Shown here: in pieces, positions 1 through 43,712 of the stretch
Layout: each line of letters opens with the position of its first letter
Numbering within the stretch: the stretch's first letter is position 1
Sequence record: NC_070950.1
Length of the DNA stretch: 64,000 nucleotides
Direction: 5' to 3' (one strand)
Notes under the pieces: model-generated
The model's input: the letters and a program-made list of their open reading frames with translations, nothing else
The model's database searches: none
What the model was told of the DNA's origin: nothing
Made by a program: the position numbers and the translations under genes

Positions 1-1
1 G

Positions 2-23154: not shown

Positions 23155-23164
23155 AACATAGTCC

Positions 23165-23196: not shown

Positions 23197-23249
23197 CTCT
23201 TATGAATTTATTTTTAATTAATTAATGTTAAACCTAGGATAGTATAGTA

Positions 23250-23450: not shown

Positions 23451-23530
23451 ACATAGGATGTTTTATGATCAGTAAAGAAATACGATAATCTAAACTTATT
23501 AGTTCAAACACTGTAATCTAGGAGATAACC

Positions 23531-27977: not shown

Positions 27978-28008
27978 CCTTTCAATACCTTTATTTAGGA
28001 AAAATATC

Positions 28009-28536: not shown

Positions 28537-28567
28537 TCAAAAATCTCCGTGCCCTACCTAAATAAGG

Positions 28568-28921: not shown

Positions 28922-28924
28922 AAC

Positions 28925-28958
28925 AGTATAGTCCATCCCCTAGGGGATGGACTATACT
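28925..28958. terminator. Perfect 34-nt palindrome, probable terminator
   Basis: AGTATAGTCCATCCCCTAGGGGATGGACTATACT, with T10 downstream. Confidence 0.8.
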
Positions 28959-28987
28959 CAACATTTCATTTTTTTTTTCACTAACGA

Positions 28988-28997
28988 ATTTTATGCT
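28988..28997 (+). promoter_or_regulatory. Putative late promoter (TATG core)
   Basis: ATTTTATGCT. Identical 10-mer at 32441-32450, and ATTTTATG on the minus strand at 43392-43399; all lie 65-76 nt before tailspike starts. Confidence 0.45.
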
Positions 28998-29070
28998 TTG
29001 AAAACCGAGTATGTGGGACGCCGCATAAACGTAATCATACATGTATGCTTATTGGTGAAAAGAGGACATT

Positions 29071-30708
29071 ATGACCACACCAACCAAATTACCGATTCCC
29101 AGCAATAACTTGCTGGATTCGAGATTTAACTTTGAGAAGTTAGACCAGATAGTTAATTCCGATGCCAATTATTATACCGATAGATTCGGTAAGAAAAGAT
29201 TTACTTTTAATGGAATATATCTCGCTTTAAAAGGATACTTTGATACTTTAAAATCAAATTTATCTTCAGACGAAGGATATAAAGAAATAGGCGGGTTTTT
29301 TAGTGCTGAGGGACCGGAACAGATAGGCTATCAAAAATATTCCATTTTTGATAGAGTTTTCAAAAGAGGGATGTATGAAATTGATCAAGGGCCTGGAGAT
29401 CCAAAAGGAATTGCCGGAATAACATTTGGTGGGGAAAATAATAAAGGGACGATCCTACTGGATGAAAGAGGGCGTATTCAAACCTATTCCGTAAAAGAAA
29501 ATGTTATTACCGCCGCAAGGGTAGCCATTCCCTATGGAGAACTCTTTGGTCAAGGACCTAATGCCAGTAACTACGACGGGCACATCGTCCATTTCCCTTT
29601 TCCAGGAGGAGAAGACGACAGCCTACATTCGTCTTTAGTTTTTATTCCAAACCAATTAGGCGGTTCTGACGTATGGGTGCGGGGACCGGGGGCGTACGGA
29701 AATTACGACGTTCCTTATCCTAATGCTAAAAAAGTGATGTCTAAACTCGCCAAAGTTAATGATCTTCCACCGGCTATATTAAAATCGAGTACCAACTATA
29801 GCAGCTTTGTTAGCTCGGTAAGTTGGAGCCTGCTTTTTGTTTTAAGAACCGATACTGTTGGACCTATTTTTACCGGTGTTTATATTTCTGGAAACGTTCT
29901 TAGTAATGCGGTATATAGTTATCTCATAGAGGTTAACAATGTCGGAACTTTAGCCCCAACTACAGCGACAGCTAAAGATGTGATGAGGGTGACTTGTCTT
30001 AGGGACCGAGGCGACGCCCAGTGGAGTACCGATAACCAGACTAAATTCGGTTACGTTTACGATAGTGCTAATAACACGCTTTCTTTTTATGCTAAAGATG
30101 CGATACGCAGCGATAACGCGACCTTTATTCCTTGGCGTTACACCGATCAAAATAGTGCAGGTGTTTTAGGCGTAGATGTTAAACAACCTAATAACACTTA
30201 TGTTAGCGTGGAGCCCACTGGAATTGTTTATTTAGATGTCAACGACGCATTAACGAACAACACTTATGTGGATCTAAATGATGGGACTGTCGTAAAGACC
30301 ACCGGTGCAGTGATAAGACTCACTAATGGCATTACTTCAAGCACCAAAACACCCATCACGGGATTATTCAAAAAGAACGATGATTATTGCGCTATTAACC
30401 GAGGATATTCCGGGTTAAATATTGTAACGGCAACGAAATTATCTACGGGAACCTATCAAATTACTGGGGCGACAACTAATAAGACGGGTATAGGGTGGAA
30501 ACTCAAATCCCCGGTTTTTTCTGGTGGGAGCGGGATTCAAAATATAGTTGGGAACATAGTTTCTGATACGGGAACTGTGATTACAATCGAAGTAAGACAA
30601 GTGGTCTACACACTTAATACTACGACTAATGCGATCACCCAATCTCTTGGTGATTTGATTGATATTCCTGCTGATTCATGGGTTGATATCCACACGTCAT
30701 TGAGGTAA
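29071..30708 (+). CDS. Tail fibre / receptor-binding protein with the shared N-terminal module
   Basis: MTTPT..IPS..D..FN.EKLD..VNSD..YTDRFG..R.T module. C-terminal KLSTGTY.I.G...GDLIDIPADSWVDI resembles enterobacterial prophage tail-fibre ends. Confidence 0.8.
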   Translation: MTTPTKLPIPSNNLLDSRFNFEKLDQIVNSDANYYTDRFGKKRFTFNGIYLALKGYFDTLKSNLSSDEGYKEIGGFFSAEGPEQIGYQKYSIFDRVFKRGMYEIDQGPGDPKGIAGITFGGENNKGTILLDERGRIQTYSVKENVITAARVAIPYGELFGQGPNASNYDGHIVHFPFPGGEDDSLHSSLVFIPNQLGGSDVWVRGPGAYGNYDVPYPNAKKVMSKLAKVNDLPPAILKSSTNYSSFVSSVSWSLLFVLRTDTVGPIFTGVYISGNVLSNAVYSYLIEVNNVGTLAPTTATAKDVMRVTCLRDRGDAQWSTDNQTKFGYVYDSANNTLSFYAKDAIRSDNATFIPWRYTDQNSAGVLGVDVKQPNNTYVSVEPTGIVYLDVNDALTNNTYVDLNDGTVVKTTGAVIRLTNGITSSTKTPITGLFKKNDDYCAINRGYSGLNIVTATKLSTGTYQITGATTNKTGIGWKLKSPVFSGGSGIQNIVGNIVSDTGTVITIEVRQVVYTLNTTTNAITQSLGDLIDIPADSWVDIHTSLR

Positions 30709-30711
30709 ATA

Positions 30712-32391
30712 ATGAATTTTTATTATGTCGATCCTTCTCTTAAAGTAGATGGAAACGGAACGCTGTCATCTCCTTTTAATTCGATGGATTCCTTGGTTGC
30801 TTCCAGCTGGGCGCATCCGATGACCATTCTTATTAAAAGAGGGACATCTTTTAAATGGTCGTATTTAAATAATTCCTTAGCTAATCTTAACTCTGTCTTA
30901 TTTTGTAACCAATCTGGAACGCAAAGCGTTCTTTCTTCTTATGGCGATGGTCCTCTGCCAATATGGTATCCGGCAGATGAAACAAAAAGACACACTTATA
31001 CCATATTTCAAAATTTTTACATAGGTGATCTTCAACTATCTCCTACCCCTGGCGTGGTGCAAACAATGGGGTATCTTTATGGTTGGATAAAGGGAGACAG
31101 TAATGGGTTATGTAACATGGAAATCGGTAATTTAAGATTTATAGGAACGCCTGAATCTATCGGTAAGTCTGCTGGAATGAATGAGGTGGCGTGTATATTG
31201 TTACAGGCGGATTACGTCAGTAGGACGAATATCGCGCACAAAATTTACATCCATGACATATACGGAGACCATGTTAATTGTGGAATAATGGTAAGAGGAA
31301 ATCCACATCTTTCCGATACCACTACTTTTTATGGTGATCAAAGAAAAAGTTATGGGGTAAGAATACTGGATATCTCTTTTACAAACATAATCAATTACGG
31401 CATCAAGCTCTGTGGCGCAACCAGTAAAAATAAAAATAAAAATGTGAGGGGGGATGAATGGGAATCCGGATTCGATGGGGTTTATTACTCTTCTTACAAA
31501 ACAAACGTTTATAATCCAAACACCGATCCAAAAGGTTCAACTGGTCGTGCCGATGTTCCCATTTGGATTACTATGTGTTCTTATATCACGGGGCAGAATT
31601 TCGAGATTCACGGATCAGGGCCTGGTCTTCCCGATAGACAATCGTTGGATTTTGATTATCATACCAACAATTGTACTTTTCGATATGGGTATTGTACTAA
31701 CAACGCCAGAGGTCCGATGTTTATACAAGGCCCTTATAGCAACTCTTGGTATGCTGCACAAGGATATACTGCGCCGAGCTCGGATCCGTACACTTTATAT
31801 AAGACATTAGGGTGCGGTGTAATAAATAATGTCATTGAATACGTGACGTTCTATAACGACGGAATCGGCAGAACCGACGAGGTTAGTACATTTAAATGGA
31901 CGAAACCACAAGTTTATCGGTATTGCTATGACAACACCATCAGAAACTGTCTTTTTATCGATTCAGCCACCAGAACGGGTGATAACATTGTAGGGGCGAA
32001 CCCTCAGACTGATGATGATGCAACCGCTAATTCTCTTAGCATCGATAGCTGTATTTTTTATTGGAGAATAAGAGACGAAAGCGATTTAATCTCATCGTCT
32101 GTTGTGACGTCATTTGGAGCCTTACTCCAAAAAATCAGTTTCAAAAACTGTTTGATTTTTTCTAAGTCGTGGGCTACCACGCCATCATTACCTGGCGTGG
32201 TTACATCGGGAATCCTTTACGCAGATCCTAAATTTAAAAATGAAATCCCAACTGTTCCTCCTTCCGGATTTAAAGAAGCGATGAATATTTTGAGGTTATC
32301 AAGTAGTTCTCCTGCTTTATCCGCGGGTACCATTAATCCGAATCCAGATAGTTGGGGCAACACAGGAAAAAATATAGGGTGGGAACAATAA
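30712..32391 (+). CDS. Right-handed parallel beta-helix protein (putative depolymerase), lacking the N-module
   Basis: YYVDPS...GNGT..SPF, ILIKRGT, SSYGDGPLP start; Asn-ladder repeats; ADPKF...LRLSSSSPALSAG end. Confidence 0.75.
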   Translation: MNFYYVDPSLKVDGNGTLSSPFNSMDSLVASSWAHPMTILIKRGTSFKWSYLNNSLANLNSVLFCNQSGTQSVLSSYGDGPLPIWYPADETKRHTYTIFQNFYIGDLQLSPTPGVVQTMGYLYGWIKGDSNGLCNMEIGNLRFIGTPESIGKSAGMNEVACILLQADYVSRTNIAHKIYIHDIYGDHVNCGIMVRGNPHLSDTTTFYGDQRKSYGVRILDISFTNIINYGIKLCGATSKNKNKNVRGDEWESGFDGVYYSSYKTNVYNPNTDPKGSTGRADVPIWITMCSYITGQNFEIHGSGPGLPDRQSLDFDYHTNNCTFRYGYCTNNARGPMFIQGPYSNSWYAAQGYTAPSSDPYTLYKTLGCGVINNVIEYVTFYNDGIGRTDEVSTFKWTKPQVYRYCYDNTIRNCLFIDSATRTGDNIVGANPQTDDDATANSLSIDSCIFYWRIRDESDLISSSVVTSFGALLQKISFKNCLIFSKSWATTPSLPGVVTSGILYADPKFKNEIPTVPPSGFKEAMNILRLSSSSPALSAGTINPNPDSWGNTGKNIGWEQ

Positions 32392-32399
32392 TCTAACAA

Positions 32400-32432
32400 T
32401 TACTACTGGTCGGTATTTCCGACCAGTAGTAA
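32400..32432. terminator. Intrinsic terminator
   Basis: 14-bp stem TTACTACTGGTCGG / CCGACCAGTAGTAA. Confidence 0.8.
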
Positions 32433-32512
32433 CCTTCTCGATTTTATGCTGATCTAAATTCAGTAGACTTGCGCAAGTCTTTACAATTTATTTATTCATA
32501 AGGAGTAACCTC

Positions 32513-34627
32513 GTGGCTACAACTCCAACTACGGGTGATATCCCCAGCAATGCTGCGGTGGACCTCAAGTTTAACTCGGAACAATTCGACCGAGTGATGA
32601 ATTCTGACGATCTGACTTATACAGATCGGTTTGGTAAAAAACGCATTACGATGAAAGGTGTACAAGAACTAGCTAACGGGTTCCAGGATACTTTCACTAA
32701 TCTGCTGGGTTCTCCTGACGGGTTCAAATTAATCGGCGGAGTTAAATCTTTTGATACTTTAAGATCGACCCCGGTGAAAACGGAAGGCCAGCGTATTTTT
32801 CTTAAGTCTTATTATGAAAACGGCTCTACCGGCGGTGGTATTTTTATTGGTCATATCGGCACTAAGTTAGATGACGGCGGTACTGTTGCCCAGGGCGTGG
32901 GCTTTTATTGGGAAAGGGTTGGGTCAGAAATAAAACTCGCCGATTACGGGATTTACCAGCAAAATATTTCCGTGGGAACCCCCGTCGACATGTCCGGATT
33001 ATTGCAGAGTGCAATAAATCAAGCGATTTCTCGCAAAACCCATATCGTTACAGGCATGGGAAACGAAAACCATTATATAAAATCAGGGATTTATATAAAA
33101 AATGGGATTACCATAACAGGACTCAAAGGGATCACGGGTCCGCTCCCATTATTTCTAGACTCATCTGTTTTCTCAGGAATAACAGCGCCTGGGTACAGTG
33201 TTCCATGGGCCCTAACTAACCTTAACGCCACGTACGACGCTACAGGAATGATCTTCGGGACATCGATAGGAAACCAGTTAATCGATTCAATAACGATAAG
33301 AGATATTAACTCAAGACATTCCAAATTGGGCGGGCAGCTTCATACATTTAGCGGAACGGTAATTAGAGGGGCTTTATGTTCAACTGGTTTCGACGGGCCA
33401 GGGGTTTACTTGTCGAGCTGTTATGATTCGTCAATTCTTGATGTCCGGGCCATCAGTTGCGGTAACACGTCTTATTGGGGTGTTTCTTTCGAGAGTTATC
33501 CGGCATCAACAGCGTCAACATTGGATACTTCCAATCACTTAACCGTTGGGTCTGTTGAAGTTCACGATTGTTACGACAAATGTTTAAACCTGAATGCTTC
33601 TTCAAGCATGATATCTCATATCCATGAAGAGGCTTCTTACGTCACCGACACCACTACTTGGTCTTCGGCGACGGTCTCGACTAATGGATTTGGATGGACC
33701 AACACCATTCTTTCCGGAGCCTGGTCCGTTTATGGAACAGTTAGAATTCTTCCTACTTCTTCTACTGACAGTAATCACGTAACGACGATCGTTTCTGATC
33801 AGCTAGAAATAGGGTCGATTAACACCACGGGTAATGTCAGTCTCCATTTCTCGTACACGACCGTAAAAAGGGGAATCTCCATAGGTACGGCGGATATAGC
33901 AAAGAATCTCTATGTTACTTCCGATGTTCCTGGAGAAATAGGTTACTGTCAATTGATAGGCGATGCGTCCGTAGCCACCATCTTATCTAACTCATTAAAT
34001 TTTGAATATCTTAATATTCCTGGATCTTCCGGATCGGTTAGTTCCGCCGGAGGCGTGTTTGGAAAGGTCGTGTGTAAAACGGCCAGTTTTAGTTCTTCCG
34101 TAATTCATAAAGGGTCATTTACGACATTGAATTTGTTAGGTAAAACTTACGTTAGGGATGTTGGGGCGGCAGCACTGGTCGTTTCAGGAGGAAAAAATAA
34201 AATAGAGGATTCCTATATTTCTGGGAATGCAACTTTAGACGGCGGCGGAACAATATTTAACACGGACATAGCCGGACCCGCATCCTTTACTGGATCGTGG
34301 GCGTCGAGAATGAATAGAGTTAATGGAAATTACTCTATTGGATCTTCCTCAGCTGAGACGTACGCGTCAGAACATAGTAACATTTTCGTAAACGGTCAGC
34401 TTTCAATCAATGGATACGCTAAAGCATCGTTAGAAAAAATGACCGTGGGTAACATCTACTTCAATGTTACTGGCGGATGGTGTACTTTAGAAAAAATAAA
34501 GATGGCCGGGGCTTTAAGTGGAAACCCAATAAGCGCAACAAATATTCCTGGGTACGGGTCGGTAACAACCAATCCTTCTACCGGGGCGATCTATGTTTAT
34601 AAATCCACAGGATGGACGGAATTATAA
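32513..34627 (+). CDS. Tailspike / putative depolymerase with the shared N-terminal module
   Basis: GTG start after AAGGAG. N-module, then tailspike neck motif (IFLKSYYE..STGGG.F...DDGGT...G.YWER), then D.S.LLQSAIN.A beta-helix cap. Confidence 0.85.
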   Translation: MATTPTTGDIPSNAAVDLKFNSEQFDRVMNSDDLTYTDRFGKKRITMKGVQELANGFQDTFTNLLGSPDGFKLIGGVKSFDTLRSTPVKTEGQRIFLKSYYENGSTGGGIFIGHIGTKLDDGGTVAQGVGFYWERVGSEIKLADYGIYQQNISVGTPVDMSGLLQSAINQAISRKTHIVTGMGNENHYIKSGIYIKNGITITGLKGITGPLPLFLDSSVFSGITAPGYSVPWALTNLNATYDATGMIFGTSIGNQLIDSITIRDINSRHSKLGGQLHTFSGTVIRGALCSTGFDGPGVYLSSCYDSSILDVRAISCGNTSYWGVSFESYPASTASTLDTSNHLTVGSVEVHDCYDKCLNLNASSSMISHIHEEASYVTDTTTWSSATVSTNGFGWTNTILSGAWSVYGTVRILPTSSTDSNHVTTIVSDQLEIGSINTTGNVSLHFSYTTVKRGISIGTADIAKNLYVTSDVPGEIGYCQLIGDASVATILSNSLNFEYLNIPGSSGSVSSAGGVFGKVVCKTASFSSSVIHKGSFTTLNLLGKTYVRDVGAAALVVSGGKNKIEDSYISGNATLDGGGTIFNTDIAGPASFTGSWASRMNRVNGNYSIGSSSAETYASEHSNIFVNGQLSINGYAKASLEKMTVGNIYFNVTGGWCTLEKIKMAGALSGNPISATNIPGYGSVTTNPSTGAIYVYKSTGWTEL

Positions 34628-34643
34628 ATTTAAAATCAATCTT

Positions 34644-34669
34644 ATTTCCCTGACGGACGTCAGGGAAAT
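34644..34669. terminator. Hairpin, probable terminator
   Basis: ATTTCCCTGACG-GA-CGTCAGGGAAAT. Confidence 0.65.
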
Positions 34670-34692
34670 GGCTATTAAAGAAAGGCTAGAAC

Positions 34693-37600
34693 ATGACCAC
34701 GCCAACCGATAAAGATATACCGAGTAACTCGGTACAAGATAGACTGTATAACGCCGAGAAATTTGATGAGTTTATGAACTCGGATAATGTCAATTACACT
34801 GACCGTAAAGGAAAAAGCAGATGGACATTATCGGGTATTAGACAAGCCGTCCAAAATTGGATGGATACTCTGAAAACCAGTTCAGGGGCTTCAGCTATCG
34901 GCTACGGTACGAGCACAGTCGCCGATGAAATCGCTAAGACGGTCAAGCAGCAGATCACTTTCTCAACCGGCGGCACACTGAATACACCGTTAGATCGTAT
35001 AAGTGACGGAACGTATTTGTATTACTGGACCGGTGTATTCCCGAAACAAATCCCGGCGAATTCAACAATTGATTCAACCGGCGGCATGGGAGTTGGTGCG
35101 TGGGCCGCGGATACCGATTCATTATTGAGAAAAAAATTATCAGATGAGGGCGGTTCTCAGCTTATTTTCGGGTTAGGAAACATAATCGGGACAGTCGTCG
35201 AGATCCTGAATTCCACAGAATCCCCCCAGATATATCAGGCAAATGGGTTTTATGCGCAGAATGACGGCGGCGAAGGCGTTTGGGTAGCGACGGGGAATAC
35301 CTCTCCTGAATTATCAGGTAAACACGTGCCATCAAGCGCGGCGGTATACAACGCAAATGGCGTCGAATATCAACTGAAAGTACAATCTGGATTTGAATTA
35401 TCAGCAAAAGCTAACGGATCTAAGCCAGTCAGCAATGTCGATGCTCAAACCGAAGATTTCGTATGTCTTGGTGAAGTAGTGAACGGTATCACGTCGCGTG
35501 TCAAAACTATGAGCAATGACGACGATTTTTGGACGTACCTAAAAGTCACCATACCGTCCGAGACCCCATTACGTATCGGGAAAAGCAGTATCAAGGCTTA
35601 TTCGCGCTTGACGTTAGATTTTCAGCAGGCTTCAATTTACGTCAGGCCGAGCCCGTCAAAACGCCAGGAAGTCACCGGCGTTTATATGAACGCCATCGAG
35701 CGCGGTATTGAAGATATCAAGGCGATATCCGCAAAGTATGCCGGTAAGACGTCTTACTTTAATATGACCGTTTCGAATTTTCACATCATCGGTGGGAAGT
35801 TCTTCGGCGACCATAACACTGATAAGGGGGTTGCGAATTGCAGTACCGGCACTGGATTGCTCACTTACAATTTAGAAGAGTCCAGCGTCACTAATACGTG
35901 GTTCCAGGGATTTGCTTGTGGGCGTCAATACGTCCGCACCGTGTCCGGTTATTATTTCGATAACCTTGGGCGCAAAATAACGGGCACGCTGGTTCCAGAA
36001 GTTGCTTCTTCAGCCACTGGTTCTTATGAGGGCGTTAAGGAATGGTCCGTCACGGCTTATGGCTGCCGTTACATGTACCTGAGAACTGTCAGTAACTGGG
36101 CGAGATTCGAGAACTGCAAATTCGGTACCTACGCTGACTGGGGGTCAAGCCCTGATGGCAACCAGTGCGAATACTTCATTGAGAACCGAGGAGCCGGTGT
36201 AGTATTCAGTGGCGGTGTGATTGAAGCCAATACCTCGGCCGCCAACCCAACAAAAGGCTTTGTGAGGGACTTCGCCCGCGGGTGTACGTTCACAGGTATC
36301 TACTACGAGAACTGCCTGTCGGCTGGGTGGGTCATCACCACTCCTGAAAAGAGCCAGTACAACCGAGCTAATGGACTGTTCCTTACAGCTATTGGGAGTC
36401 AGTATACTGGATCGTCGAAGGGCGCCCCCCTGGTTAAATTTGAACCGGGATACTTTGGCTCATACGACGCTACTACGGGGCTGTATAAAACAGGTGGTTG
36501 GGAAACAAATTACCAGTATTCGGGTGGGGTTAACACCTGGTCTGTAGGTCAACCTGTTTTAGATTCCGGGGCTTTCCCTCACGGTGGGTATGACTTTAAA
36601 TATGGGACTTACGGGATCCATTATTCTGGAGCTGCGCCGGATGTAGACTCGCTTCGGGACACCCCTGAAGGTAATGAGTTTCTGTCTCAATATGGATTAC
36701 TGGTTAACTCCGGAGTTTTGTTATTCCCTGAATTATCCCCGGCATATCACTCTAACATCGTAGTTTGGTATAAAGACCTGACGGGTAACTTTGACCCAAG
36801 GGGTATTGTTGTTGGTGATTTCGACAATAACAACGTGTCTGATGGGACCAGCAATGCGCTCTACCGTACTAATGGGTTTAATTACTATGACTACGGTAAT
36901 GGGTATAAGGCGGCCATTGTGCCCTACGTTAACCCGCGCCCACTCGATAACAGGATGACAACGTCTGCCGGACGCAAGTTAAAAATTACTGTAACCAGTG
37001 ACGCTCCTATTATCCTGAAAAGCATTCAGGCGTTCGTAGGGGGGACTCCGATATTCCCGCCAGCCGTTAAGGAATATGTGCCTCGTTCACAACGAGACCG
37101 CATATGGGGTACTATGACTGGTGCCTCTACGAATTCTGGTGCGTATTACGGTCCACTGATTGGCGGCGGTATCTTCCGACCAGGTGATGTAGTGTTACCT
37201 TTTACGCCGTTCCAGAACCCCTTGTTGCTGGATCCGCTAACGTACACAGATATTTCCGGGACCTTTGGCTCGAGCGCAGAAATCGTTACTATTACCGGTG
37301 GTGCGACCTGGGGAGCTGGATTATCCGGTAAAACCATCGCCCTTACAGTAGTAGACCAAGACGCAACCCATGGCTGGACAACCGTCTCGGTACCGTCTGA
37401 CAGTTTGGCATACATCTTAACCGGGATGCCGGTTAACATAACGGCAAACTCCTCCGGGGGGGGTACAGGGTTTATAAATATTGTACGCAGGATTATTAAT
37501 TCCGATGGGACTCTGAGCAATAATTACGTGTTGTCCGGTACCCTTGGGGCCCCTGGTACGACCCTAACAGCGTCAACAAACGGGAGTTATACATTGCGCT

Positions 37601-38334
37601 CTGGGGTGTCTTCGACGCTTTCTGGTGTTTCTGGTTCGTTCAGTTCTGGATCGTGGTTAGGTTCGTCATCTGGAGATTTGCGCGTAGGGTATGGGGCTTC
37701 ATCTTCTAGTACGCGTCAAATACGTTACTACTACAACGGCACGGATGTGTCCGCCGGGATAGGGTCTAATGGTCTTACCTCCTTGTACTTAACAGGTACA
37801 GGCGGGATCACCCTCAATGGGTCTTTACTAACAAGTACAAGCTACTCATTTGGTAGTGCGTCGGCATACCCAGCGAACATCTACTCTCAAAACGCCGTAA
37901 CAGTAGTCTCTGACGAGAACTACAAAACCGACATAGTAGAGTTAGAAGATGCTGAGATTGAGTGCGCTAAAGCCTGCGCCAAGTTGTATCGCCGCTATAA
38001 GTTGAAAACAGCCGTAGCTTTAAAAGGTGAAGATGGGGCCAGATACCATGTGGGTACCATTGCTCAACTTGTTATGCAGGCTTTCACTGACGCTGGTCTG
38101 GACTGGACGAAGTACGGGATCATTACTTATGAGTCTTGGGAAGATTCCGATGCAGTTTTTGAAACTGTGGGTGCTACCTATGATGAAGAAGGTAATGAGT
38201 TAACTCCTGAAACTACTGTAGAAGTTACTCCTGCTAAAAAGGCCGGGGAAATCTACATGGTTCGCTACGACGAATTTAATAGTTTCGTTATGGCTGGACT
38301 AGAAGCGCGGATTCAAGACCTAGAGATTAAGTGA
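34693..38334 (+). CDS. Large tailspike with N-module, TSP1/gp66-type N-domain, beta-helix and C-terminal S74 intramolecular chaperone
   Basis: GGTL.....DG..YYWTG.FPK.IPANST..STGG.G.GAW domain; VSDENYKTDI Ser-Lys autocleavage site; HVG.IAQ.V..AF...GLD..KYG; RYDEF..F. Confidence 0.88.
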   Translation: MTTPTDKDIPSNSVQDRLYNAEKFDEFMNSDNVNYTDRKGKSRWTLSGIRQAVQNWMDTLKTSSGASAIGYGTSTVADEIAKTVKQQITFSTGGTLNTPLDRISDGTYLYYWTGVFPKQIPANSTIDSTGGMGVGAWAADTDSLLRKKLSDEGGSQLIFGLGNIIGTVVEILNSTESPQIYQANGFYAQNDGGEGVWVATGNTSPELSGKHVPSSAAVYNANGVEYQLKVQSGFELSAKANGSKPVSNVDAQTEDFVCLGEVVNGITSRVKTMSNDDDFWTYLKVTIPSETPLRIGKSSIKAYSRLTLDFQQASIYVRPSPSKRQEVTGVYMNAIERGIEDIKAISAKYAGKTSYFNMTVSNFHIIGGKFFGDHNTDKGVANCSTGTGLLTYNLEESSVTNTWFQGFACGRQYVRTVSGYYFDNLGRKITGTLVPEVASSATGSYEGVKEWSVTAYGCRYMYLRTVSNWARFENCKFGTYADWGSSPDGNQCEYFIENRGAGVVFSGGVIEANTSAANPTKGFVRDFARGCTFTGIYYENCLSAGWVITTPEKSQYNRANGLFLTAIGSQYTGSSKGAPLVKFEPGYFGSYDATTGLYKTGGWETNYQYSGGVNTWSVGQPVLDSGAFPHGGYDFKYGTYGIHYSGAAPDVDSLRDTPEGNEFLSQYGLLVNSGVLLFPELSPAYHSNIVVWYKDLTGNFDPRGIVVGDFDNNNVSDGTSNALYRTNGFNYYDYGNGYKAAIVPYVNPRPLDNRMTTSAGRKLKITVTSDAPIILKSIQAFVGGTPIFPPAVKEYVPRSQRDRIWGTMTGASTNSGAYYGPLIGGGIFRPGDVVLPFTPFQNPLLLDPLTYTDISGTFGSSAEIVTITGGATWGAGLSGKTIALTVVDQDATHGWTTVSVPSDSLAYILTGMPVNITANSSGGGTGFINIVRRIINSDGTLSNNYVLSGTLGAPGTTLTASTNGSYTLRSGVSSTLSGVSGSFSSGSWLGSSSGDLRVGYGASSSSTRQIRYYYNGTDVSAGIGSNGLTSLYLTGTGGITLNGSLLTSTSYSFGSASAYPANIYSQNAVTVVSDENYKTDIVELEDAEIECAKACAKLYRRYKLKTAVALKGEDGARYHVGTIAQLVMQAFTDAGLDWTKYGIITYESWEDSDAVFETVGATYDEEGNELTPETTVEVTPAKKAGEIYMVRYDEFNSFVMAGLEARIQDLEIK

Positions 38335-38473
38335 TTAATAACTCACAATTGATGTGGGGACCGGTGACGAGTGATAGAATCTGTAAGAGGTGACATCGTT
38401 ACAGATTTTTTGTTACCGCACCGGTCGATGTTATGAAAGGATCATGGTTTTATCACACACAGCAGGTACTTAT

Positions 38474-39247
38474 ATGCATAATCGTAGTGTTAAGCGTGCT
38501 AACCGCGACGCTCGTCGCGAAGCAAGACGTCAAGATAAGTCCCAAAGTAGTCAACTGAAACTGGTGGACAACAATTTCAGTGAAGTAAACCTACCTCTTG
38601 CAAAAGCTGATCGGAGTAAGATTGAGCCGAAAACCCCAATGCAACAAAAATATTGGGATGGGTTACACGCCCACGATGTCGTCATCGGTATTGGTGAAGC
38701 GGGTAGCGGTAAAACGTTCCTCCCGACTTGTTACGCTGCAGAACGTCTGCTGGCTAAAGACGTGGAAAAGATTATCGTTACACGACCAGTCCTACAGGCC
38801 GATGAAGATCTGGGTTTTCTCCCCGGGGATGTTAATGAGAAATTCGCACCTTACTTCCGACCGGTCTACGATATCTTACTGAAGCGCCTGGGTGGTGGAA
38901 TGCTTAACTATTGCATGAAGCCTGGCGTGGAGAAAGTTGAAGTCGCCCCCTTTGCTTTTATGAGAGGTCGTACTTTTTCTGACTCAGTAGTGATTCTTGA
39001 CGAAGCGCAAAACGTTACAGTTATGCAGATGAAAATGTTCATCACTCGTATGGGTGAGAACACTACGGTAATCATCAACGGCGACCTTACCCAGTGCGAT
39101 CTTCCTAAAGGAGTTAAATCCGGTCTGGAAGATCTGCTGGAACGCATTGAACGAGATCCTGAAAATGGATTCCCGATTTATCGTTTCAATGCGGCTGATA
39201 GTGTGCGGTCAGAGATTTGTTCCAAAGCCCTGAAACTTTATAAGTAA
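38474..39247 (+). CDS. phoH: PhoH-family ATPase
   Basis: GEAGSGKT, VTRPVLQADEDLGFLPGD, FMRGRTF, ILDEAQN, NGDLTQCDLP. Likely start is ATG 38474; the tool start is 38390. Confidence 0.95.
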   Translation: MHNRSVKRANRDARREARRQDKSQSSQLKLVDNNFSEVNLPLAKADRSKIEPKTPMQQKYWDGLHAHDVVIGIGEAGSGKTFLPTCYAAERLLAKDVEKIIVTRPVLQADEDLGFLPGDVNEKFAPYFRPVYDILLKRLGGGMLNYCMKPGVEKVEVAPFAFMRGRTFSDSVVILDEAQNVTVMQMKMFITRMGENTTVIINGDLTQCDLPKGVKSGLEDLLERIERDPENGFPIYRFNAADSVRSEICSKALKLYK

Positions 39248-39252
39248 GTTCT

Positions 39253-39289
39253 AATAACTCCTACTCCCGATAAGGGAGTAGGAGTTATT
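39253..39289. terminator. Terminator of the repeated CTCCTACTCCC hairpin family
   Basis: 16-bp stem AATAACTCCTACTCCC-GATAA-GGGAGTAGGAGTTATT. Confidence 0.85.
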
Positions 39290-39337
39290 TTAAACGCACC
39301 ACGACCATTTATGAACTTTTCATAAGAGACTGTAATC

Positions 39338-39805
39338 ATGAACCTCATGTACGACAATTACTACGGAAAAGAAATACTTGGATTGGGTTTAGAGGGTGAA
39401 GTCATCACAATGCTAAATTTGGCGATGGCTGATATTAATCACTTCGCTAAGAAAAGTATCGCTAAAGATATCAACCCCTATCCGTTCAATCTGGAAGATT
39501 TTAAGCACAACCGTTTTAACGAACACTACTTCCTCGTTTTTGATGGGAAGAAAATAGTGTCGATTCTATCCGTCGTTTACGCTTTAGAGCATCATCTCAA
39601 AATAGCTAAAATCTTTAACGTTTATACGTTACCGGAGTATCGCCATAAAGGGCTTGCTAAACGCAACCTAATCGCCGCTATCGTGTCGGCAAGATCAAAT
39701 GGGTACATTGTGCAGTTAAACGTTTACAGGTCTAATAAAGCCGCTCAGAGGCTTTACAAGAGCCTTAAATTTAAACCCGTCGAATACACTATGCAGCTCG
39801 GTTAA
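39338..39805 (+). CDS. GNAT-family acetyltransferase
   Basis: IFNVYTLPEYRHKGLAK (motif A); LNV...NKAAQRLYKSLKF (motif B). Confidence 0.85.
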   Translation: MNLMYDNYYGKEILGLGLEGEVITMLNLAMADINHFAKKSIAKDINPYPFNLEDFKHNRFNEHYFLVFDGKKIVSILSVVYALEHHLKIAKIFNVYTLPEYRHKGLAKRNLIAAIVSARSNGYIVQLNVYRSNKAAQRLYKSLKFKPVEYTMQLG

Positions 39806-39917
39806 TTTTAACGACCATAATGTTTTATTGGTAATAAACGAGAATACGTTGTTTTAAACATCGGTTTGAAATAACACGTTCTCATTTTAAACAATAAATA
39901 AAAAGGTAATAGCCGTT

Positions 39918-40706
39918 ATGAAAATCACGAAACAAGAATTATTATCCGCTTATGTTAACAACGGCACGTCAGATGTCTTAATTATCAATAAAGATAATGA
40001 CACGTTAACTCTTCGTCTTCGTCAGTCTGATACCGATTACGACGATTTCAAGAACATCATAGGTTGGTTAGAAGAAATCACCTTCGTTGGCCATAATGAA
40101 TTACGTCTAAATCCAGGATCCTCACTAACCGGTAAGATCCATCTGGATAACGTGAGTTCTGACGTAGCGAAACTTAATATCGGCCACAGCTCTCTTGGTG
40201 TAACTAAGATAATTGGACGTGGTAGTGTGGAACTCACTAACGCCAGGATACAAGCGGCCACGATCATCTCCAATGCAGGTGATGATGTTACGACAATTAA
40301 AGATTCCGAAATCATTAAAGTTGATGTGGGGGCGAGTAAGATAGCTAATAGTTCTTTGGTTTGTAAAGACATCGTAGGATCGTCCCTCAAAGTCCATAAC
40401 TCCGATATTTGTCATTCGGTTATTTACGCTAACGGGGGAGAGATATTGGATAAGGCGATACGTTCTATTGTCGTCGATACGGACTTATTCGAAGGGAAGT
40501 ATTTATCCATTGGATTCAACGGTTGTCAGATCGTTTGTTATACAAATAAGAACGAGAAGATCGTCGTTGTAGGCGATAAACGATACAACCTAGGACTGTG
40601 GGAAGAACAATTCGTTAATAAAGAGCAAAATTCATTCATTAAAATGGTGAATCAAAAGAAATTAGAAATGATGAATATGTTCTTCGATAGTTTGGCGTTT
40701 AAATAA
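39918..40706 (+). CDS. Hypothetical protein with a probable beta-solenoid segment
   Basis: Repeated I-x-D/N-S-x-I pattern (TIKDSEII, KIANSSL, VHNSDICHSVI). Confidence 0.7.
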   Translation: MKITKQELLSAYVNNGTSDVLIINKDNDTLTLRLRQSDTDYDDFKNIIGWLEEITFVGHNELRLNPGSSLTGKIHLDNVSSDVAKLNIGHSSLGVTKIIGRGSVELTNARIQAATIISNAGDDVTTIKDSEIIKVDVGASKIANSSLVCKDIVGSSLKVHNSDICHSVIYANGGEILDKAIRSIVVDTDLFEGKYLSIGFNGCQIVCYTNKNEKIVVVGDKRYNLGLWEEQFVNKEQNSFIKMVNQKKLEMMNMFFDSLAFK

Positions 40707-40712
40707 TAAAGT

Positions 40713-40748
40713 TTTACTCTACCTCGCGATATCGCGAGGTAGAGTAAA
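40713..40748. terminator. Perfect 36-nt palindrome, bidirectional terminator
   Basis: TTTACTCTACCTCGCGATATCGCGAGGTAGAGTAAA between convergent stops. Confidence 0.85.
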
Positions 40749-40752
40749 TTGT

Positions 40753-43323
40753 TTAACTTACATAAATGGAAGTTAACGATAGCTGGGAGAATATCCCTGA
40801 AATGTACGCCTGAACACCTCGCGTCCCTACGGTGTAGCGATCAATAAAACTATTCATTTGGGTCGAACTAGTTCCTGAATAGTCAGTCCCTGAAACCGAC
40901 ACGGAGGTTGTTCCCGATAGAGTATTGACTGAACTGGTAATATTAGTGGCGATGGATCTCGCCAAAATACCACTTCCGGGATAGTCAATTTTAAAAACAT
41001 CAAAAAAGGTATTACCGGATTGCAAATGGGTGGCCTGCAGACAATTTCCTTTGGCCACATATAAAGCCCCGGACCAACTACTATTATTTACTCCGGTGTT
41101 CCAGATCATCAGAGAAGAAATTGGCGTACCTGAGTTATTATAATAGGAGCAGTCACTTAACCGGAACCATTGGGCTAAATTCAAATTAGATGATGTGACC
41201 GAACTTAACGAGTAGTCGCCGGAAAAACTTACCCCTGACGCTTTCAGTCTGTGAAGGAACGCCGAATCGGCGGTCGTTAAAGGCAAATTAGTCCCTGATT
41301 TGACACTCCCTCCCCTCATGTTAATTTCTACACGTTGATTGGCTTCCTGGGTGCCGTCGTTGGTAATGAACCTTGATAACTCACAGTCGTTGAAATTATA
41401 GGACCCCCTTTGTGAGATTCTCACTAGGGTGGGGGTGCCGTTGTAATTGGGGTTGTGTAATCTCCTAGCGTCGAGCCTAATATTGTGTTGAAATCCGTAA
41501 GATGGACGTTTGATAATTAAATTATCCACCCCTACGTTGTTCATACTGACTTTCATGTCGATAGGTTCGAACATAGTGTCGGTCGATGCAGAAGTATTGC
41601 TTGCCCTGGGCTTCGTGTTGGTGAAATCAATTTTTAACGTCCCGCCGGCGGCGTAGGTAACGTTGTCAAATCGAATATTCATAGGAGGGGTAACCGTTCT
41701 GTCGCGGTTTATCCAATAAATATTTTGAAGGCAACTAGAAGCTTCCGGAGTCTCAATAGTCAAGCCGTCAATATCTATTTTATTAAATAGCTCCCCAGCC
41801 ATCTGAGACCCAGTAGGTAAAGAAGTGTAATTATCGGCGGCTCCCTGTACAATGGACCCTTCTCCATTGGACGCTAAACTGTAATATTTCCAAAATCCTC
41901 TGACCCTGACGTTACGCATAATCAGCGTCCCATCGGTGATTCCTCCGGAAGTAGTCCTGGCCTGCACAAGTGAAGGGAAAAGAAATTTTCCGTAGTAAGG
42001 GTCTCCGGATCCCCTCCCCAGTTCGTATACTGTGTCAAGTATCTCGAGAGTTGAGTTTTTAGTACCTAAGAAAACAGCAGCTCCGTCACCAATCTTGCAG
42101 TTTACAAGTTTGTAATATCCGATGCTTGGGTTATGACTATCGAAGTTGTTGGCCGAGCAATTATCAAAAATGGTATCGGCTATCCAACCGGCCGCGGATA
42201 TCGACCCCCATCCGTAGCCAAACGCGTTTACGTTTCTTACGTATAACTTCGCCCCCCACCCATGGTGGAGTGTGTAAGATGCATAAATGGTCGTTTGATC
42301 CGAGGAAGAAAAGGAAGCGGTTGGGTGAGCGTCGTAGATGAAATCCACGTAGGTGTTGTAGTAATACTGAATGTCGATAACGTGACGTGATCCTATTTCC
42401 GTAATCGGTTTATTGAGTATTCTCCCCTCTTTTATGATCAAGTTGGACACATAAAAGAACTGGAAGAATATAGGTCTAGGTCCATAACGATAGTCGACGT
42501 CCGGCATAATAAATTCACTGAAACCAGCCTGGATAGGTAGCGCCGATATGCTAGTAATCGACGTCCCGTTGTAAGGGAAGACGTTATCCATTTTGCCGTT
42601 AGCGCTTATCCTGGTTACGTGAGCGAGTTTCTGAGTTTTTGCGCCAGCTTGGGTTTGTGTGCTATTATAAACATATAGGTCGTCTGAAAAATTCATAATG
42701 ACCATGCTGTCGTTTAAAGTCGTGTCCGATCCCAACGAATCTAAACAACCGTTTCCGCTTAAGAAGTCTGTGGAGGCATTAGCATTTAACTTAGTTACCA
42801 CGGAAGATCCGGAGGCATGGTTAACTAATCCGCTCGATTGAGAGATCCAGAAAGTCCCGGTAAAATCAGCCGCCGGAATAATTTTCATTCCCCCTAAATC
42901 GGTCTTCTTATTATCGATGATCCAGTTAAACTTGGCGTTACCGGAAATCAAGTACTCACCAGATTTTTGTTTTATAGGAATGCCCGTCAATGTCGACAAT
43001 TGAATAAGGGCTAAAAGTTTGTCGGTGACGTCAACATCCCCCGTGTTCTCTATACCAAACATGTCACAGGAAAGAAATGTTTGAAGGTTAGAGACTTTAC
43101 CTCCATAAGGAAGATTTATAATTGACGACCCGTCCCCTCCGGTTAAAACATTCAGGGTTTCCTGGACGGCCGCCGCTACCCCCTTAGCGGTCAATCTCTG
43201 GTTACCAAAACGATCAGTATAGGTATTCTCATCGGAATTAATGATCTCATCTAACTTTTCGGCATTAAATCTAACATCTATAGCGGTGCTACTGGGTATA
43301 CCATTTTGTGTTGGAGTCGTCAT
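40753..43323 (-). CDS. Tailspike / putative depolymerase with the shared N-terminal module
   Basis: MTTPTQNGIPS..D.RFNAEKLDEIINSD..YTDRFG module, then DMFGI..TG.VD.TD cap and a beta-helix-like body. Confidence 0.85.
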   Translation of the reverse strand: MTTPTQNGIPSSTAIDVRFNAEKLDEIINSDENTYTDRFGNQRLTAKGVAAAVQETLNVLTGGDGSSIINLPYGGKVSNLQTFLSCDMFGIENTGDVDVTDKLLALIQLSTLTGIPIKQKSGEYLISGNAKFNWIIDNKKTDLGGMKIIPAADFTGTFWISQSSGLVNHASGSSVVTKLNANASTDFLSGNGCLDSLGSDTTLNDSMVIMNFSDDLYVYNSTQTQAGAKTQKLAHVTRISANGKMDNVFPYNGTSITSISALPIQAGFSEFIMPDVDYRYGPRPIFFQFFYVSNLIIKEGRILNKPITEIGSRHVIDIQYYYNTYVDFIYDAHPTASFSSSDQTTIYASYTLHHGWGAKLYVRNVNAFGYGWGSISAAGWIADTIFDNCSANNFDSHNPSIGYYKLVNCKIGDGAAVFLGTKNSTLEILDTVYELGRGSGDPYYGKFLFPSLVQARTTSGGITDGTLIMRNVRVRGFWKYYSLASNGEGSIVQGAADNYTSLPTGSQMAGELFNKIDIDGLTIETPEASSCLQNIYWINRDRTVTPPMNIRFDNVTYAAGGTLKIDFTNTKPRASNTSASTDTMFEPIDMKVSMNNVGVDNLIIKRPSYGFQHNIRLDARRLHNPNYNGTPTLVRISQRGSYNFNDCELSRFITNDGTQEANQRVEINMRGGSVKSGTNLPLTTADSAFLHRLKASGVSFSGDYSLSSVTSSNLNLAQWFRLSDCSYYNNSGTPISSLMIWNTGVNNSSWSGALYVAKGNCLQATHLQSGNTFFDVFKIDYPGSGILARSIATNITSSVNTLSGTTSVSVSGTDYSGTSSTQMNSFIDRYTVGTRGVQAYISGIFSQLSLTSIYVS

Positions 43324-43436
43324 CTCTCCCTCCGACTATAAAAATTAACGGCCACACATATTACTATGCATGACTCCTAATGAACTTGGGTCATAAAATT
43401 CAACATGATATTAATCTACATTATTGAGGTTTTATT

Positions 43437-43712
43437 ATGAAATTTACTTCTGCTGTTGCAAAACTCAAACCCGGTTACGGGATTCAGTGCACCGATTGGA
43501 ATGGTGCTAATCAATTTGTTTTTGATGCCTCTTTGACCATGTCTCTCGTTGAAGCACGCAAGCAGGGCTTCCCCGGCCCGGTTAAACTGAAACCGGTTTA
43601 CGTGTTGCATAACGCTAAAGGTGAGCTGCAACCTGGTTGGGTGCCTTCTCAGGGTGATCTGCGCAACGAGAACTGGGTCGTTGTCAAAATCAAAGACGCG
43701 CTGGCGAAATGA
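43437..43712 (+). CDS. tad2: DUF2829 / Tad2-family protein (putative immune-signal sponge)
   Basis: MKF..A...LKPG.....WNG..F.F ... GWVPSQGDL.NENW matches the Tad2 pattern F..A...LK.G...WNG...WVPSQ.D...EDW. Confidence 0.8.
   Translation: MKFTSAVAKLKPGYGIQCTDWNGANQFVFDASLTMSLVEARKQGFPGPVKLKPVYVLHNAKGELQPGWVPSQGDLRNENWVVVKIKDALAK

What the first reader, a model, noticed from the sequence alone, without database searches (positions are those of the whole stretch)
29071..43323. Array of receptor-binding proteins sharing one interchangeable N-terminal module
Seen: four otherwise unrelated proteins (29071, 32513, 34693, and 40753-43323 on the minus strand) start with the same ~55-aa module, MTTPT..IPS...D..[FY]N.E[KQ][LF]D...NSD...YTDR[FK]G..R.T..G. 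Their bodies differ completely. Established: multi-tailspike phages use shared N-terminal anchors to hang different depolymerases on one baseplate, and I recognise this module type from enterobacterial prophage tail fibres. Inference: a phiKZ-like jumbo phage has co-opted a prophage-type anchor as a plug-in adaptor for several capsule, EPS or LPS specificities. This arrangement is poorly described in this lineage.
Basis: partly seen in the sequence, partly recalled or inferred. Interest (0 to 1): 0.8.

Follow-up and report, generated by a model that had tools for sequence, protein, structure and literature searches.

The report
Tailspike array with position-specific anchor heads
Klebsiella jumbo phage Miami carries four different tail spike/fibre genes that all begin with the same 60-residue attachment head, a head whose structure is already solved in a small Shigella phage, so the arrangement is a new variant of a known plug-in design rather than a new kind of system.

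Summary
The window is Klebsiella phage Miami (Chimalliviridae, phiKZ-like). Four proteins (gp092, gp094, gp095, gp099) share only their first 60-100 residues. A profile of the module finds exactly four copies in the whole genome, all in this window.

The module is homologous in sequence and predicted fold to residues 4-59 of Shigella siphophage Sf11 tailspike gp13 (PDB 9OCC). There, three heads clamp one helix of the distal tail protein.

Three bodies resemble experimentally validated Klebsiella capsule depolymerases: KN4dep, KN2 ORF96 and the K64 lyase, whose catalytic Tyr/His/Arg are conserved. The fourth resembles the non-enzymatic RaK2 gp526 fibre.

- Across six Miami-like genomes, 40 heads fall into six subtypes that follow gene order, while bodies are swapped (32 body clusters). 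Subtype-specific residues include the two positions that contact the dock in Sf11. The head therefore looks like a position label, not one interchangeable plug.
- Miami has no homologue of the Sf11 docking protein, so the dock is unknown.
- Each transcription unit starts with an ATTTTATG motif containing the phiKZ late-promoter TATG.

The head also occurs once each in about 230 small siphophage records, in E. coli prophages, and three times in an Aeromonas chimallivirus. Verdict: a real feature, a new variant of a known kind, of moderate interest.

The parts
28988..28995 (+). ATTTTATG motif 76 nt upstream of gp092. It is a candidate late promoter and contains TATG.
   Evidence: only 3 matches in the 64 kb window, all sense and upstream of head-bearing genes. 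TATG is the phiKZ late-promoter consensus. Promoter function is inferred.
29071..30708 (+). gp092, an RBP with a subtype A head (29071-29250). Its body is RaK2 gp526-like and ends in a Phage_tail_C_2 domain.
   Evidence: Pfam PF25670 E 9e-8. phrog_20024 E 9e-131 over residues 61-543. PDB 9occ_G E 3.5e-11 on residues 2-50. RaK2 gp526 is a virion fibre protein without a degrading domain.
30712..32391 (+). gp093, a headless predicted right-handed beta-helix protein in the same transcription unit as gp092. It is a candidate glycan-active enzyme or partner of gp092.
   Evidence: No module. phrog_16942 E 4e-208, the RaK2_00525 family. AF2 model pLDDT 62, confident over residues 1-260. Foldseek top hits are beta-helix glycosidases, lyases and tailspikes at TM about 0.3. 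Homologues lie in Pantoea chromosomes and phage FBKp24. Among the six Miami-like loci it is found only in Miami.
32441..32448 (+). ATTTTATG motif 65 nt upstream of gp094.
32513..34627 (+). gp094, an RBP with a subtype D head (32513-32698). Its neck is conserved to about residue 135-190 across relatives, and its body is of the KN4dep family.
   Evidence: 9occ_G E 1.3e-9 on residues 1-55 and neck hits to DpK2/Depo32/WceF. Body 37.6% identical over 99% to KN4-1 KN4dep, which is a validated KN4 depolymerase. Neck conservation.
34693..38334 (+). gp095, an RBP with a subtype E head (34693-34872), a Tail_spike_N neck, a KN2-depolymerase-like body and a C-terminal S74 intramolecular chaperone.
   Evidence: Pfam PF18668 E 8e-15 (residues 77-138) and PF13884 E 1e-8 (residues 1073-1136). 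9occ_G E 7e-14 on residues 2-161. About 81% nucleotide identity to orf96 of phage 0507-KN2-1, a validated KN2 depolymerase. 73% protein identity overall to siphophage VLCpiS13a gp65, with the similarity lying in the body. GC is 0.50 here against 0.40-0.45 around it.
38474..39247 (+). PhoH-like ATPase gene embedded in the RBP island. It is conserved at this place in all six genomes and is not an RBP.
   Evidence: Pfam PF02562 E 8.5e-73. Synteny.
39338..39805 (+). GNAT acetyltransferase gene embedded in the island and conserved in all six genomes.
   Evidence: Pfam PF00583 E 2.5e-12..
39918..40706 (+). gp098, a 262-aa protein of unknown function, conserved at this place in all six genomes.
   Evidence: No Pfam or PHROG hit. 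Conservation.
40713..40748 (.). A 16-bp-stem hairpin between the convergent ends of gp098 and gp099. It looks like a bidirectional terminator.
   Evidence: Annotated as a terminator in the record.
40753..43323 (-). gp099, an RBP with a subtype F head (43144-43323). Its body is homologous to the K64 capsule lyase K64-ORF41.
   Evidence: 8x8m_A E 8e-52 over residues 55-763 and 9occ_G E 9e-10 on residues 2-57. The lyase Tyr, His and Arg are aligned and conserved. AF2 head model and Foldseek match to 9occ chains at TM 0.71-0.77.
43392..43399 (-). ATTTTATG motif 69 nt upstream of gp099.

Best explanation
The region is the receptor-binding-protein island of the chimallivirus Miami. It has three late transcription units: gp092-gp093, gp094-gp095, and gp099 on the other strand.

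The four head-bearing proteins are most likely trimeric tail spikes or fibres. Each is fixed to the virion by its first 60 or so residues: an extended N-terminal peptide, helix 14-29, a short hairpin, and helix 46-61. In Sf11, three such heads wrap around one helix donated by a tail protein.

In the Miami lineage the head has diversified into six subtypes (A to F) that keep a fixed gene order. Miami has A, D, E and F. I infer that each subtype addresses its spike to its own docking helix on the baseplate periphery.

Recombination just behind the head (residues 50-190, depending on subtype) exchanges the enzymatic bodies with unrelated Klebsiella phages. This sets which capsule types can be degraded.

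Shown: homology of the head to a solved anchor, the subtype structure, body homologies, and absence of the siphophage dock. Inferred: trimer state, presence in the virion, subtype-specific docking, promoter function and capsule specificities.
For: Head equals solved anchor:
- All four heads hit 9occ_G (Sf11 gp13) residues 3-58 at E 1e-9 to 7e-14.
- The AF2 model of gp099 residues 1-150 (pLDDT 78) matches five 9occ gp13 chains at target-normalised TM 0.71-0.77, rmsd 2.5-3.0 A and 49-53% identity.
- In Sf11 these residues form a helical bundle with one helix of distal tail protein gp17, and mass spectrometry identified gp13 in mature virions.

Position:
- In the 150 best of 1279 profile hits among 1.84 billion representatives, the module begins at residue 1-6 in 148. 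One starts at residue 11 and one is a repeat artefact.

Bodies are RBP-like:
- Pfam and PHROG tail hits.
- KN4dep family.
- KN2 ORF96.
- K64 lyase with catalytic residues conserved.
- RaK2 gp526, a virion fibre protein.

Subtypes:
- All 780 head pairs are homologous, but only 17 of 780 body pairs are, giving 32 body clusters among 40 RBPs.
- The six head clusters are perfectly collinear in six genomes.
- Within-slot identity is 0.76 against 0.47 between slots.
- Five of six slots are exactly monophyletic.
- Sf11 contact residues Arg16 and Lys19 map to two of the 12 subtype-specific columns.

Body exchange:
- gp095 against siphophage VLCpiS13a gp65 shows a weakly similar head, an unrelated neck and a near-identical body.
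- There is a GC jump in the gp095 body.

Late expression:
- The TATG-containing motif lies upstream of each unit.
- Sigma-70-like sites are not enriched.
Against: - No homologue of the Sf11 docking protein gp17 exists anywhere in Miami, by single sequence or by a 120-sequence HMM. Elsewhere it accompanies the head in 5 of the 6 contexts I could check: Sf11, VLCpiS13a, E. coli XJ55, L013 and L014.
- No virion proteomics or structure exists for Miami.
- Subtype-specific residues could reflect old paralogues each under its own purifying selection, without different docks.
- KPN8 has two genes each of subtypes A, B and E, which a strict one-dock-one-spike model does not explain.
- Miami lacks subtypes B and C, yet the baseplate-module segment I compared (gp057 residues 1-330) is 97% identical to KPN8.
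- The motif was found after the fact.
Confidence: 0.72

Rival explanations
1. There is one promiscuous dock. All head subtypes bind the same kind of site, so the spikes compete and virions are mosaics. On this reading the six subtypes are merely old paralogues kept in order by synteny.
For: Sixteen head positions are invariant in all 40 heads, and the fold is shared. KPN8 has duplicated subtypes A, B and E. Miami and KPN8 are 97% identical in the baseplate-module segment I compared (gp057 residues 1-330), although one has 4 spikes and the other 9. Siphophages manage with one dock type.
Against: Subtype-specific positions cluster on helix 1 and include the two Sf11 contact positions. Subtypes have stayed distinct and collinear in six genomes while the sequence directly behind them was repeatedly replaced. 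Free exchange of heads would be expected to blur this pattern.
Confidence: 0.2
2. The head is chiefly a trimerisation or assembly-nucleation element, or a tag recognised by an assembly factor. Attachment to the virion would then be made by the neck domains or by spike-to-spike contacts, as in CBA120 and RaK2.
For: Necks include Tail_spike_N (PF18668) in gp095. Subtype D has a neck conserved to residues 135-190. gp054, outside the window, has a long lineage-typical N-terminal region plus Tail_spike_N and could be the organiser. No Sf11-type dock is present.
Against: In the only solved case the head itself is the interface with the tail. Necks fall into 12 clusters and are often replaced together with the body. 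The head is therefore the only element common to all 40 proteins.
Confidence: 0.06
3. Some of these proteins are not virion parts but soluble enzymes released at lysis. The shared N-terminus would then be a relic.
For: gp093 has no head and has chromosomal homologues in Pantoea. Non-structural genes (PhoH, GNAT) sit inside the island.
Against: The heads are under strong constraint: 16 invariant positions and 0.76 identity within subtype. Homologous bodies are virion proteins in other phages. A relic would not be kept at residue 1 in 40 of 40 genes.
Confidence: 0.02

Closest known systems
Shigella siphophage Sf11 tailspike gp13 N-terminal anchor with distal tail protein gp17 adaptor helix (PDB 9OCC; J Virol 2025, PMC12724387)
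   Same: The head family is the same by sequence (E to 7e-14) and by predicted fold (TM 0.71-0.77). It sits at the extreme N-terminus of a tail spike, followed in gp095 by a similar neck.
   Different: Sf11 and its relatives have one such spike per genome and a gp17-like dock encoded a few kb upstream. Miami is a contractile-tailed jumbo phage with four such spikes (relatives have up to nine), six head subtypes and no gp17 homologue.
Branched multi-tailspike complexes of Ackermannviridae (CBA120 TSP1-4) and G7C gp63.1/gp66
   Same: Several enzymatically different spikes sit on one virion. The Tail_spike_N (PF18668) neck domain is present in gp095 and in gp054.
   Different: From established knowledge, those systems assemble through long N-terminal regions with T4 gp10-like domains on two organiser spikes. 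Here every spike carries the same short helical head. No gp10-like domain was reported by Pfam.
Alcyoneusvirus (RaK2, phiK64-1) hyperbranched fibres with 10-11 RBPs
   Same: Both are Klebsiella jumbo phages with a cluster of many RBP genes, conserved N-terminal domains and variable depolymerase bodies. The gp092-gp093 pair is homologous to RaK2 gp526-gp525.
   Different: It is a different phage family. RaK2 N-terminal domains are CBA120-like beta-sandwiches, not the Sf11-type head. The PHROG match of gp092 starts only at residue 61.
Goslar DUF7941 'fibre cloud' (Chimalliviridae; Sci Adv 2026, PMC13742148)
   Same: Both are in the same phage family, and both have many host-recognition proteins sharing one assembly module. 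Miami gp054, gp056, gp057 and gp058 share a lineage-wide N-terminal module that also hits Goslar near 20 kb.
   Different: The module in this finding is unrelated to that one. Within the family I found it only in Miami-like phages and in Aeromonas Ferozepurvirus. Whether the gp057-type module is DUF7941 was not tested.

Membership tests
Sf11 gp13-type tailspike N-terminal anchor | Sequence homology to gp13 residues 4-59 | tested here: met
   phmmer against PDB gives 9occ_G at E 3.5e-11, 1.3e-9, 6.9e-14 and 9.2e-10 for gp092, gp094, gp095 and gp099. In each case the match lies on residues 1-2 to 50-58.
Sf11 gp13-type tailspike N-terminal anchor | Same fold as the solved head | tested here: met
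   The AF2 model of gp099 residues 1-150 matches 9occ chains G, I, J, K and L at target-normalised TM 0.71-0.77 and rmsd 2.5-3.0 A over 52-57 residues. This is a monomer prediction only.
Sf11 gp13-type tailspike N-terminal anchor | Located at the extreme N-terminus of a tail spike or fibre | tested here: met
   This holds for all four in Miami, for 40 of 40 in the relatives and for 148 of the 150 best global hits.
Sf11 gp13-type tailspike N-terminal anchor | Genome encodes a gp17-like distal tail protein carrying the adaptor helix | tested here: not met
   There is no hit in any piece of the Miami record. The best E is 0.2-8, and none falls on HMM positions 1-160. The protein is present next to the head in Sf11, VLCpiS13a, E. 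coli XJ55, L013 and L014.
Sf11 gp13-type tailspike N-terminal anchor | Three heads bundle with one helix of a tail protein on the virion | not testable with these tools
   This needs a structure of the Miami baseplate or a complex prediction. The structure tool here folds single chains only.
Multi-RBP branched adsorption apparatus (CBA120 / RaK2 type) | Several RBP genes with different enzymatic bodies in one genome | tested here: met
   There are four head-bearing RBPs, plus the headless gp093 and the GH28-type gp054. A published table gives Miami 6 RBPs.
Multi-RBP branched adsorption apparatus (CBA120 / RaK2 type) | Organiser spike with a long N-terminal region that carries the other spikes | tested here: inconclusive
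   gp054 has a 275-residue lineage-typical N-terminal region plus Tail_spike_N. No interaction could be tested.
Klebsiella capsule depolymerases | gp099: homology to K64-ORF41 lyase with catalytic Tyr, His and Arg | tested here: met
   E 8e-52 over 700 residues. The three residues align to identical residues. The PDB chain index is the published number plus 20, which I inferred from all three fitting at that offset. Capsule type was not tested.
Klebsiella capsule depolymerases | gp095: homology to validated KN2 depolymerase ORF96, plus S74 chaperone | tested here: met
   81% nucleotide identity over 2.85 kb to orf96 (BAN78446.1). PF13884 E 1e-8.
Klebsiella capsule depolymerases | gp094: homology to validated KN4dep | tested here: met
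   37.6% identity over 99% of the body, E 8e-95. At this distance the capsule type cannot be inferred.
Chimalliviridae (phiKZ-like, nucleus-forming) | Taxonomic placement and hallmark genes (split multisubunit RNA polymerases, tubulin-like protein) | tested here: met
   Taxonomy. The record annotates RNAP beta fragments and a tubulin-like protein. Miami is described as a distant relative of the nucleus-forming phage RAY. I did not look for chimallin itself.

The most novel reading that the evidence does not exclude
The six head subtypes form an addressing code. Each subtype would dock on its own helix of a so-far-unidentified chimallivirus baseplate protein that is not a distal tail protein. 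The virion would then have up to six kinds of socket per sixfold unit, each able to take any body, and gene order in the island would mirror the socket set. That would make Miami-like phages a natural multi-socket chassis. It would also give the first handle on the unmodelled peripheral baseplate of Chimalliviridae.
Probability: 0.35. Interest if true: 0.65.

Novelty: new variant of a known kind. Interest (0 to 1): 0.5.

Why it matters
Plug-in N-terminal anchors are a known principle for Klebsiella phage spikes, so the finding does not change the picture of how host range evolves.

Three things are new here:
- The anchor solved in a small siphophage is reused in arrays of 3 to 9 in two genera of nucleus-forming jumbo phages, apparently without its usual dock.
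- The anchor has split into position-specific subtypes.
- Recent structures of phiKZ and Goslar left the peripheral baseplate and fibres unmodelled. A short, recognisable head with a solved homologue therefore gives a concrete feature to look for in maps of this family. It also gives a simple way to count and classify spikes in new jumbo-phage genomes.

Tried and rejected
- Docking protein by homology. I searched with Sf11 gp17 as a single sequence and as a 120-sequence HMM, against the window and then against every piece of the Miami record. Nothing was found.
- Docking protein by neighbourhood. None of the conserved small genes flanking the island has a homologue in the Aeromonas RBP locus. 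gp090, gp091 and gp098 have no family hits.
- 'Siphophages with two heads'. One search suggested 7 loci with two copies. These were spurious second domains with i-E above 100. Every non-jumbo locus has one copy.
- P0059, a 1053-aa protein with 17 partial matches. It is a perfect 56-residue tandem repeat with weak hits, and is unrelated.
- Single origin of the jumbo-phage heads. A neighbour-joining tree of 101 heads does not resolve it.
- Bacterial genome scan. The pattern-limited scan found only three Burkholderiales loci. It therefore says little about enterobacteria, and a DNA search of E. coli genomes was used instead.
- Sigma-70 promoters. They are not enriched, as expected for this family.
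- Word-indexed protein search with the head of gp099. It reached only close, subtype F relatives, 22 clusters in all.

Slip to report: early in my thinking, I began to write out from memory what I took to be the sequence of a coliphage tail-fibre protein as a possible comparator.

Full report
**Identity of the window**

Megablast of window 28000-44000 gives a 100% match to Klebsiella phage Miami (MT701590 / NC_070950, 253,383 bp). Window position equals record position minus 62,000.

Miami is a myophage of genus Miamivirus, family Chimalliviridae. The record annotates split RNA-polymerase beta subunits and a tubulin-like protein. A paper on nucleus-forming phages calls Miami a distant relative of Erwinia phage RAY. 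'phiKZ-like jumbo phage' is therefore correct.

**The observation**

- Pairwise BLASTP similarity is confined to the first 60-102 residues, at 39-53% identity and E 1e-13 to 2e-17. Nothing else is shared.
- A profile of the four heads finds exactly these four in all six frames of the window, and the next hit has E 2.2.
- tblastn finds four places in the whole record.
- A richer profile run on each piece of the record finds no more.
- The ORF between the first two (gp093, 30712-32391) lacks the module.

**What the module is**

All four heads hit one solved structure, PDB 9OCC chain G, on its residues 3-58. This is tailspike gp13 of Shigella siphophage Sf11.

The paper reports that gp13 residues 4-59 were modelled in the tail map. 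Three of them form a helical bundle with a single adaptor helix of the distal tail protein gp17. Salt bridges run from gp13 Arg16 and Lys19 to gp17 glutamates. There are six trimers per virion, and mass spectrometry identified gp13 in mature virions.

An AlphaFold2 model of gp099 residues 1-150, built on 25 sequences (pLDDT 78), gives:
- an extended peptide at residues 1-13
- a helix at 14-29
- a hairpin at 34-44
- a helix at 46-61.

Foldseek matches it to five gp13 chains of 9OCC at target-normalised TM 0.71-0.77 and rmsd 2.5-3.0 A. The module is therefore a known virion-attachment head.

**Distribution**

A profile search of 1.84 billion representative proteins gives 1279 hits at E <= 1e-3 and 420 at E <= 1e-10. 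The module begins at residue 1-6 in 148 of the 150 best, whose median length is 650 residues.

Among 50,697 phage records, 236 have the head. There is one copy each in 44-49 kb siphophages of Salmonella, Klebsiella, Escherichia, Shigella and others. Miami has 4, KPN8 has 9, and YC1, phiKp_32, BUCTxx100 and VB_ZK_P1 have 7 each. IMG/VR gives 52 loci. Half of the contigs are 42-52 kb and most of the rest are shorter fragments, with one copy each.

Aeromonas phage pAEv1810 (Ferozepurvirus, also Chimalliviridae) has three head-bearing genes side by side, with heads 30-33% identical to Miami's.

Seven of 5426 complete E. coli genomes carry head-like DNA in chromosomal tail-spike genes. In strain XJ55 the context is a prophage tail module. 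It has a 165-residue gp17-like protein (E 9e-81) and a head-bearing SGNH/GDSL hydrolase (E 6e-21).

**The bodies**

- **gp099** is homologous over 700 residues to the K64 capsule lyase K64-ORF41 (8X8M, E 8e-52). It keeps the published catalytic Tyr, His and Arg. The PDB chain index is the published number plus 20, an offset I inferred because all three residues fit it.
- **gp095** has a Tail_spike_N neck and a C-terminal S74 chaperone. It is about 81% identical in DNA to orf96 of phage 0507-KN2-1, a validated KN2 depolymerase. Against gp65 of siphophage VLCpiS13a the heads are only weakly similar, the necks are unrelated, and the bodies are near-identical from about residue 185. GC rises to 0.50 in this body, against 0.40-0.45 nearby. 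These points indicate recent exchange of the body.
- **gp094** is 37.6% identical over 99% of its body to the validated KN4 depolymerase of phage KN4-1.
- **gp092** matches the RaK2 gp526 family from residue 61 on. RaK2 gp526 is a virion fibre protein without a predicted degrading domain.
- **gp093** is headless and homologous to RaK2_00525. It is predicted to be a right-handed beta-helix resembling glycosidases, lyases and tailspikes, at modest confidence.

Capsule specificities cannot be read from these similarities, except perhaps for gp095.

**Comparative anatomy**

The island lies at the same place in six Miami-like genomes, between homologues of gp091 and gp100. PhoH, a GNAT and gp098 are embedded in it. 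The six loci hold 40 head-bearing genes.

- All 780 head pairs are homologous (median 53% identity). Only 17 of 780 body pairs are, giving 32 body clusters.
- The heads cluster into six subtypes whose order A, B, C, D, E, F (F on the opposite strand) is the same in every genome. Miami has A (gp092), D (gp094), E (gp095) and F (gp099) and lacks B and C. KPN8 has two each of A, B and E.
- Identity is 0.76 within subtypes and 0.47 between them.
- Five subtypes are exactly monophyletic in a neighbour-joining tree.
- Within a subtype, similarity usually ends at residue 50-85. It ends at 135-190 in D and at 70-130 in F.
- Twelve columns are conserved within subtypes but differ between them. They lie mostly on helix 1. 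They include the columns equivalent to Sf11 Arg16 and Lys19, the residues that touch the dock.

I read this as position-specific anchoring. It could also be old paralogy under separate constraint.

**The missing dock**

Where I could inspect the context outside jumbo phages, the head came with a gp17-like distal tail protein a few kb upstream. This held for Sf11, VLCpiS13a, E. coli XJ55 and two Burkholderiales prophage-like loci, but not for L012.

Miami has none, by single sequence or by a 120-member profile, in any piece of the record.

The baseplate cluster at the start of the window and just upstream holds gp054, gp056, gp057 and gp058. gp054 carries GH28 and Tail_spike_N domains. These four share a different, long N-terminal module found in 116 chimallivirus-type records, including EL and Goslar. 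They are the obvious candidates to carry docking helices, but I could not test this.

The 2026 structures of phiKZ and Goslar leave the peripheral baseplate and fibres largely unmodelled. Goslar uses another shared module, DUF7941, for a cloud of host-recognition proteins.

**Expression signals**

The octamer ATTTTATG occurs three times in the 64 kb window, against 4.7 expected. Each is in sense orientation, 65-76 nt upstream of gp092, gp094 and gp099. It is present upstream of 24 of the 40 genes in the six genomes.

It contains TATG, the phiKZ late-promoter consensus whose G is the start site. Sigma-70-like sites are not enriched.

With the annotated terminators and the hairpins at 28925-28958 and 40713-40748, this suggests three late units. 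The motif was found after the fact and its function is inferred.

**Comparison and novelty**

Shared N-terminal anchors with swapped bodies are established for Klebsiella phages. A 2026 survey lists Miami with six RBPs in a 'branched multi-fiber arrangement'; the term 'N-terminal' does not occur in its main text.

What I did not find described:
- the identity of the head with the Sf11 anchor
- its use in arrays in two chimallivirus genera
- the six collinear subtypes
- the absence of the usual dock.

I rate this a new variant of a known kind, of moderate interest.

Early in my thinking I began to write from memory a supposed coliphage tail-fibre sequence.

Noticed in passing
window 43437-43712 (+), gp100: A 91-aa protein next to gp099 matches the Pfam Tad2-like (Thoeris anti-defence 2) domain over its whole length (E 4.5e-14, 53 bits against a cutoff of 25). 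It is a candidate anti-Thoeris protein, annotated as hypothetical in the record.
   Followed up: no
window 1-1066 (end of gp056), 1115-4627 (gp057), 4673-7888 (gp058); L010:44305-47076 (gp054): A second family of proteins shares an N-terminal module. gp056 against gp057 gives 28% identity over 400 residues (E 1e-31), with weaker links to gp054 and gp058. The gp057 N-terminus hits 116 chimallivirus-type records including EL, RisingSun and Goslar. It may be the DUF7941 module described for Goslar, but I did not test that.
   Followed up: partly
window 38474-39247, 39338-39805, 39918-40706: PhoH-like ATPase, GNAT acetyltransferase and an unknown 262-aa protein sit inside the RBP island at the same place in all six related genomes. 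I have no explanation for why non-structural genes are kept there.
   Followed up: partly
window 30712-32391, gp093: This headless beta-helix protein has its closest named relatives in Pantoea chromosomes (57-58% identity, one on a 4.19 Mb contig), as well as in phage FBKp24. Among the six Miami-like loci it occurs only in Miami.
   Followed up: partly
L008 (phiKp_32): 1898-3034 and 29037-30173; L073 (Miami): 22809-23945: IS200/IS605-type TnpB genes flank the RBP region in phiKp_32. Miami carries a 'putative transposase' elsewhere.
   Followed up: no
L008:15898-16677 (phiKp_32 subtype C gene): This head-bearing ORF is only 259 aa and is followed by a separate 445-aa ORF. The subtype C spike of phiKp_32 may be truncated or split.
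   Followed up: no
L009 (Stenotrophomonas phage BUCTxx100): This phage is recorded on Stenotrophomonas maltophilia. Yet it is about 91% identical in DNA to Klebsiella phage Miami in the flanks of the island, and it carries seven spikes of the same design. The host label or the host range deserves a look.
   Followed up: no
P0059: This 1053-aa metagenomic protein is made of 17 identical 56-residue repeats that each weakly match head positions 12-36. It is probably unrelated or an assembly artefact.
   Followed up: yes
window 34628-34692: The 65-nt gap between gp094 and gp095 holds a perfect GC-rich inverted repeat, visible in the sequence printed. It has no ATTTTATG motif. The record does not annotate it as a terminator.
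   Followed up: no
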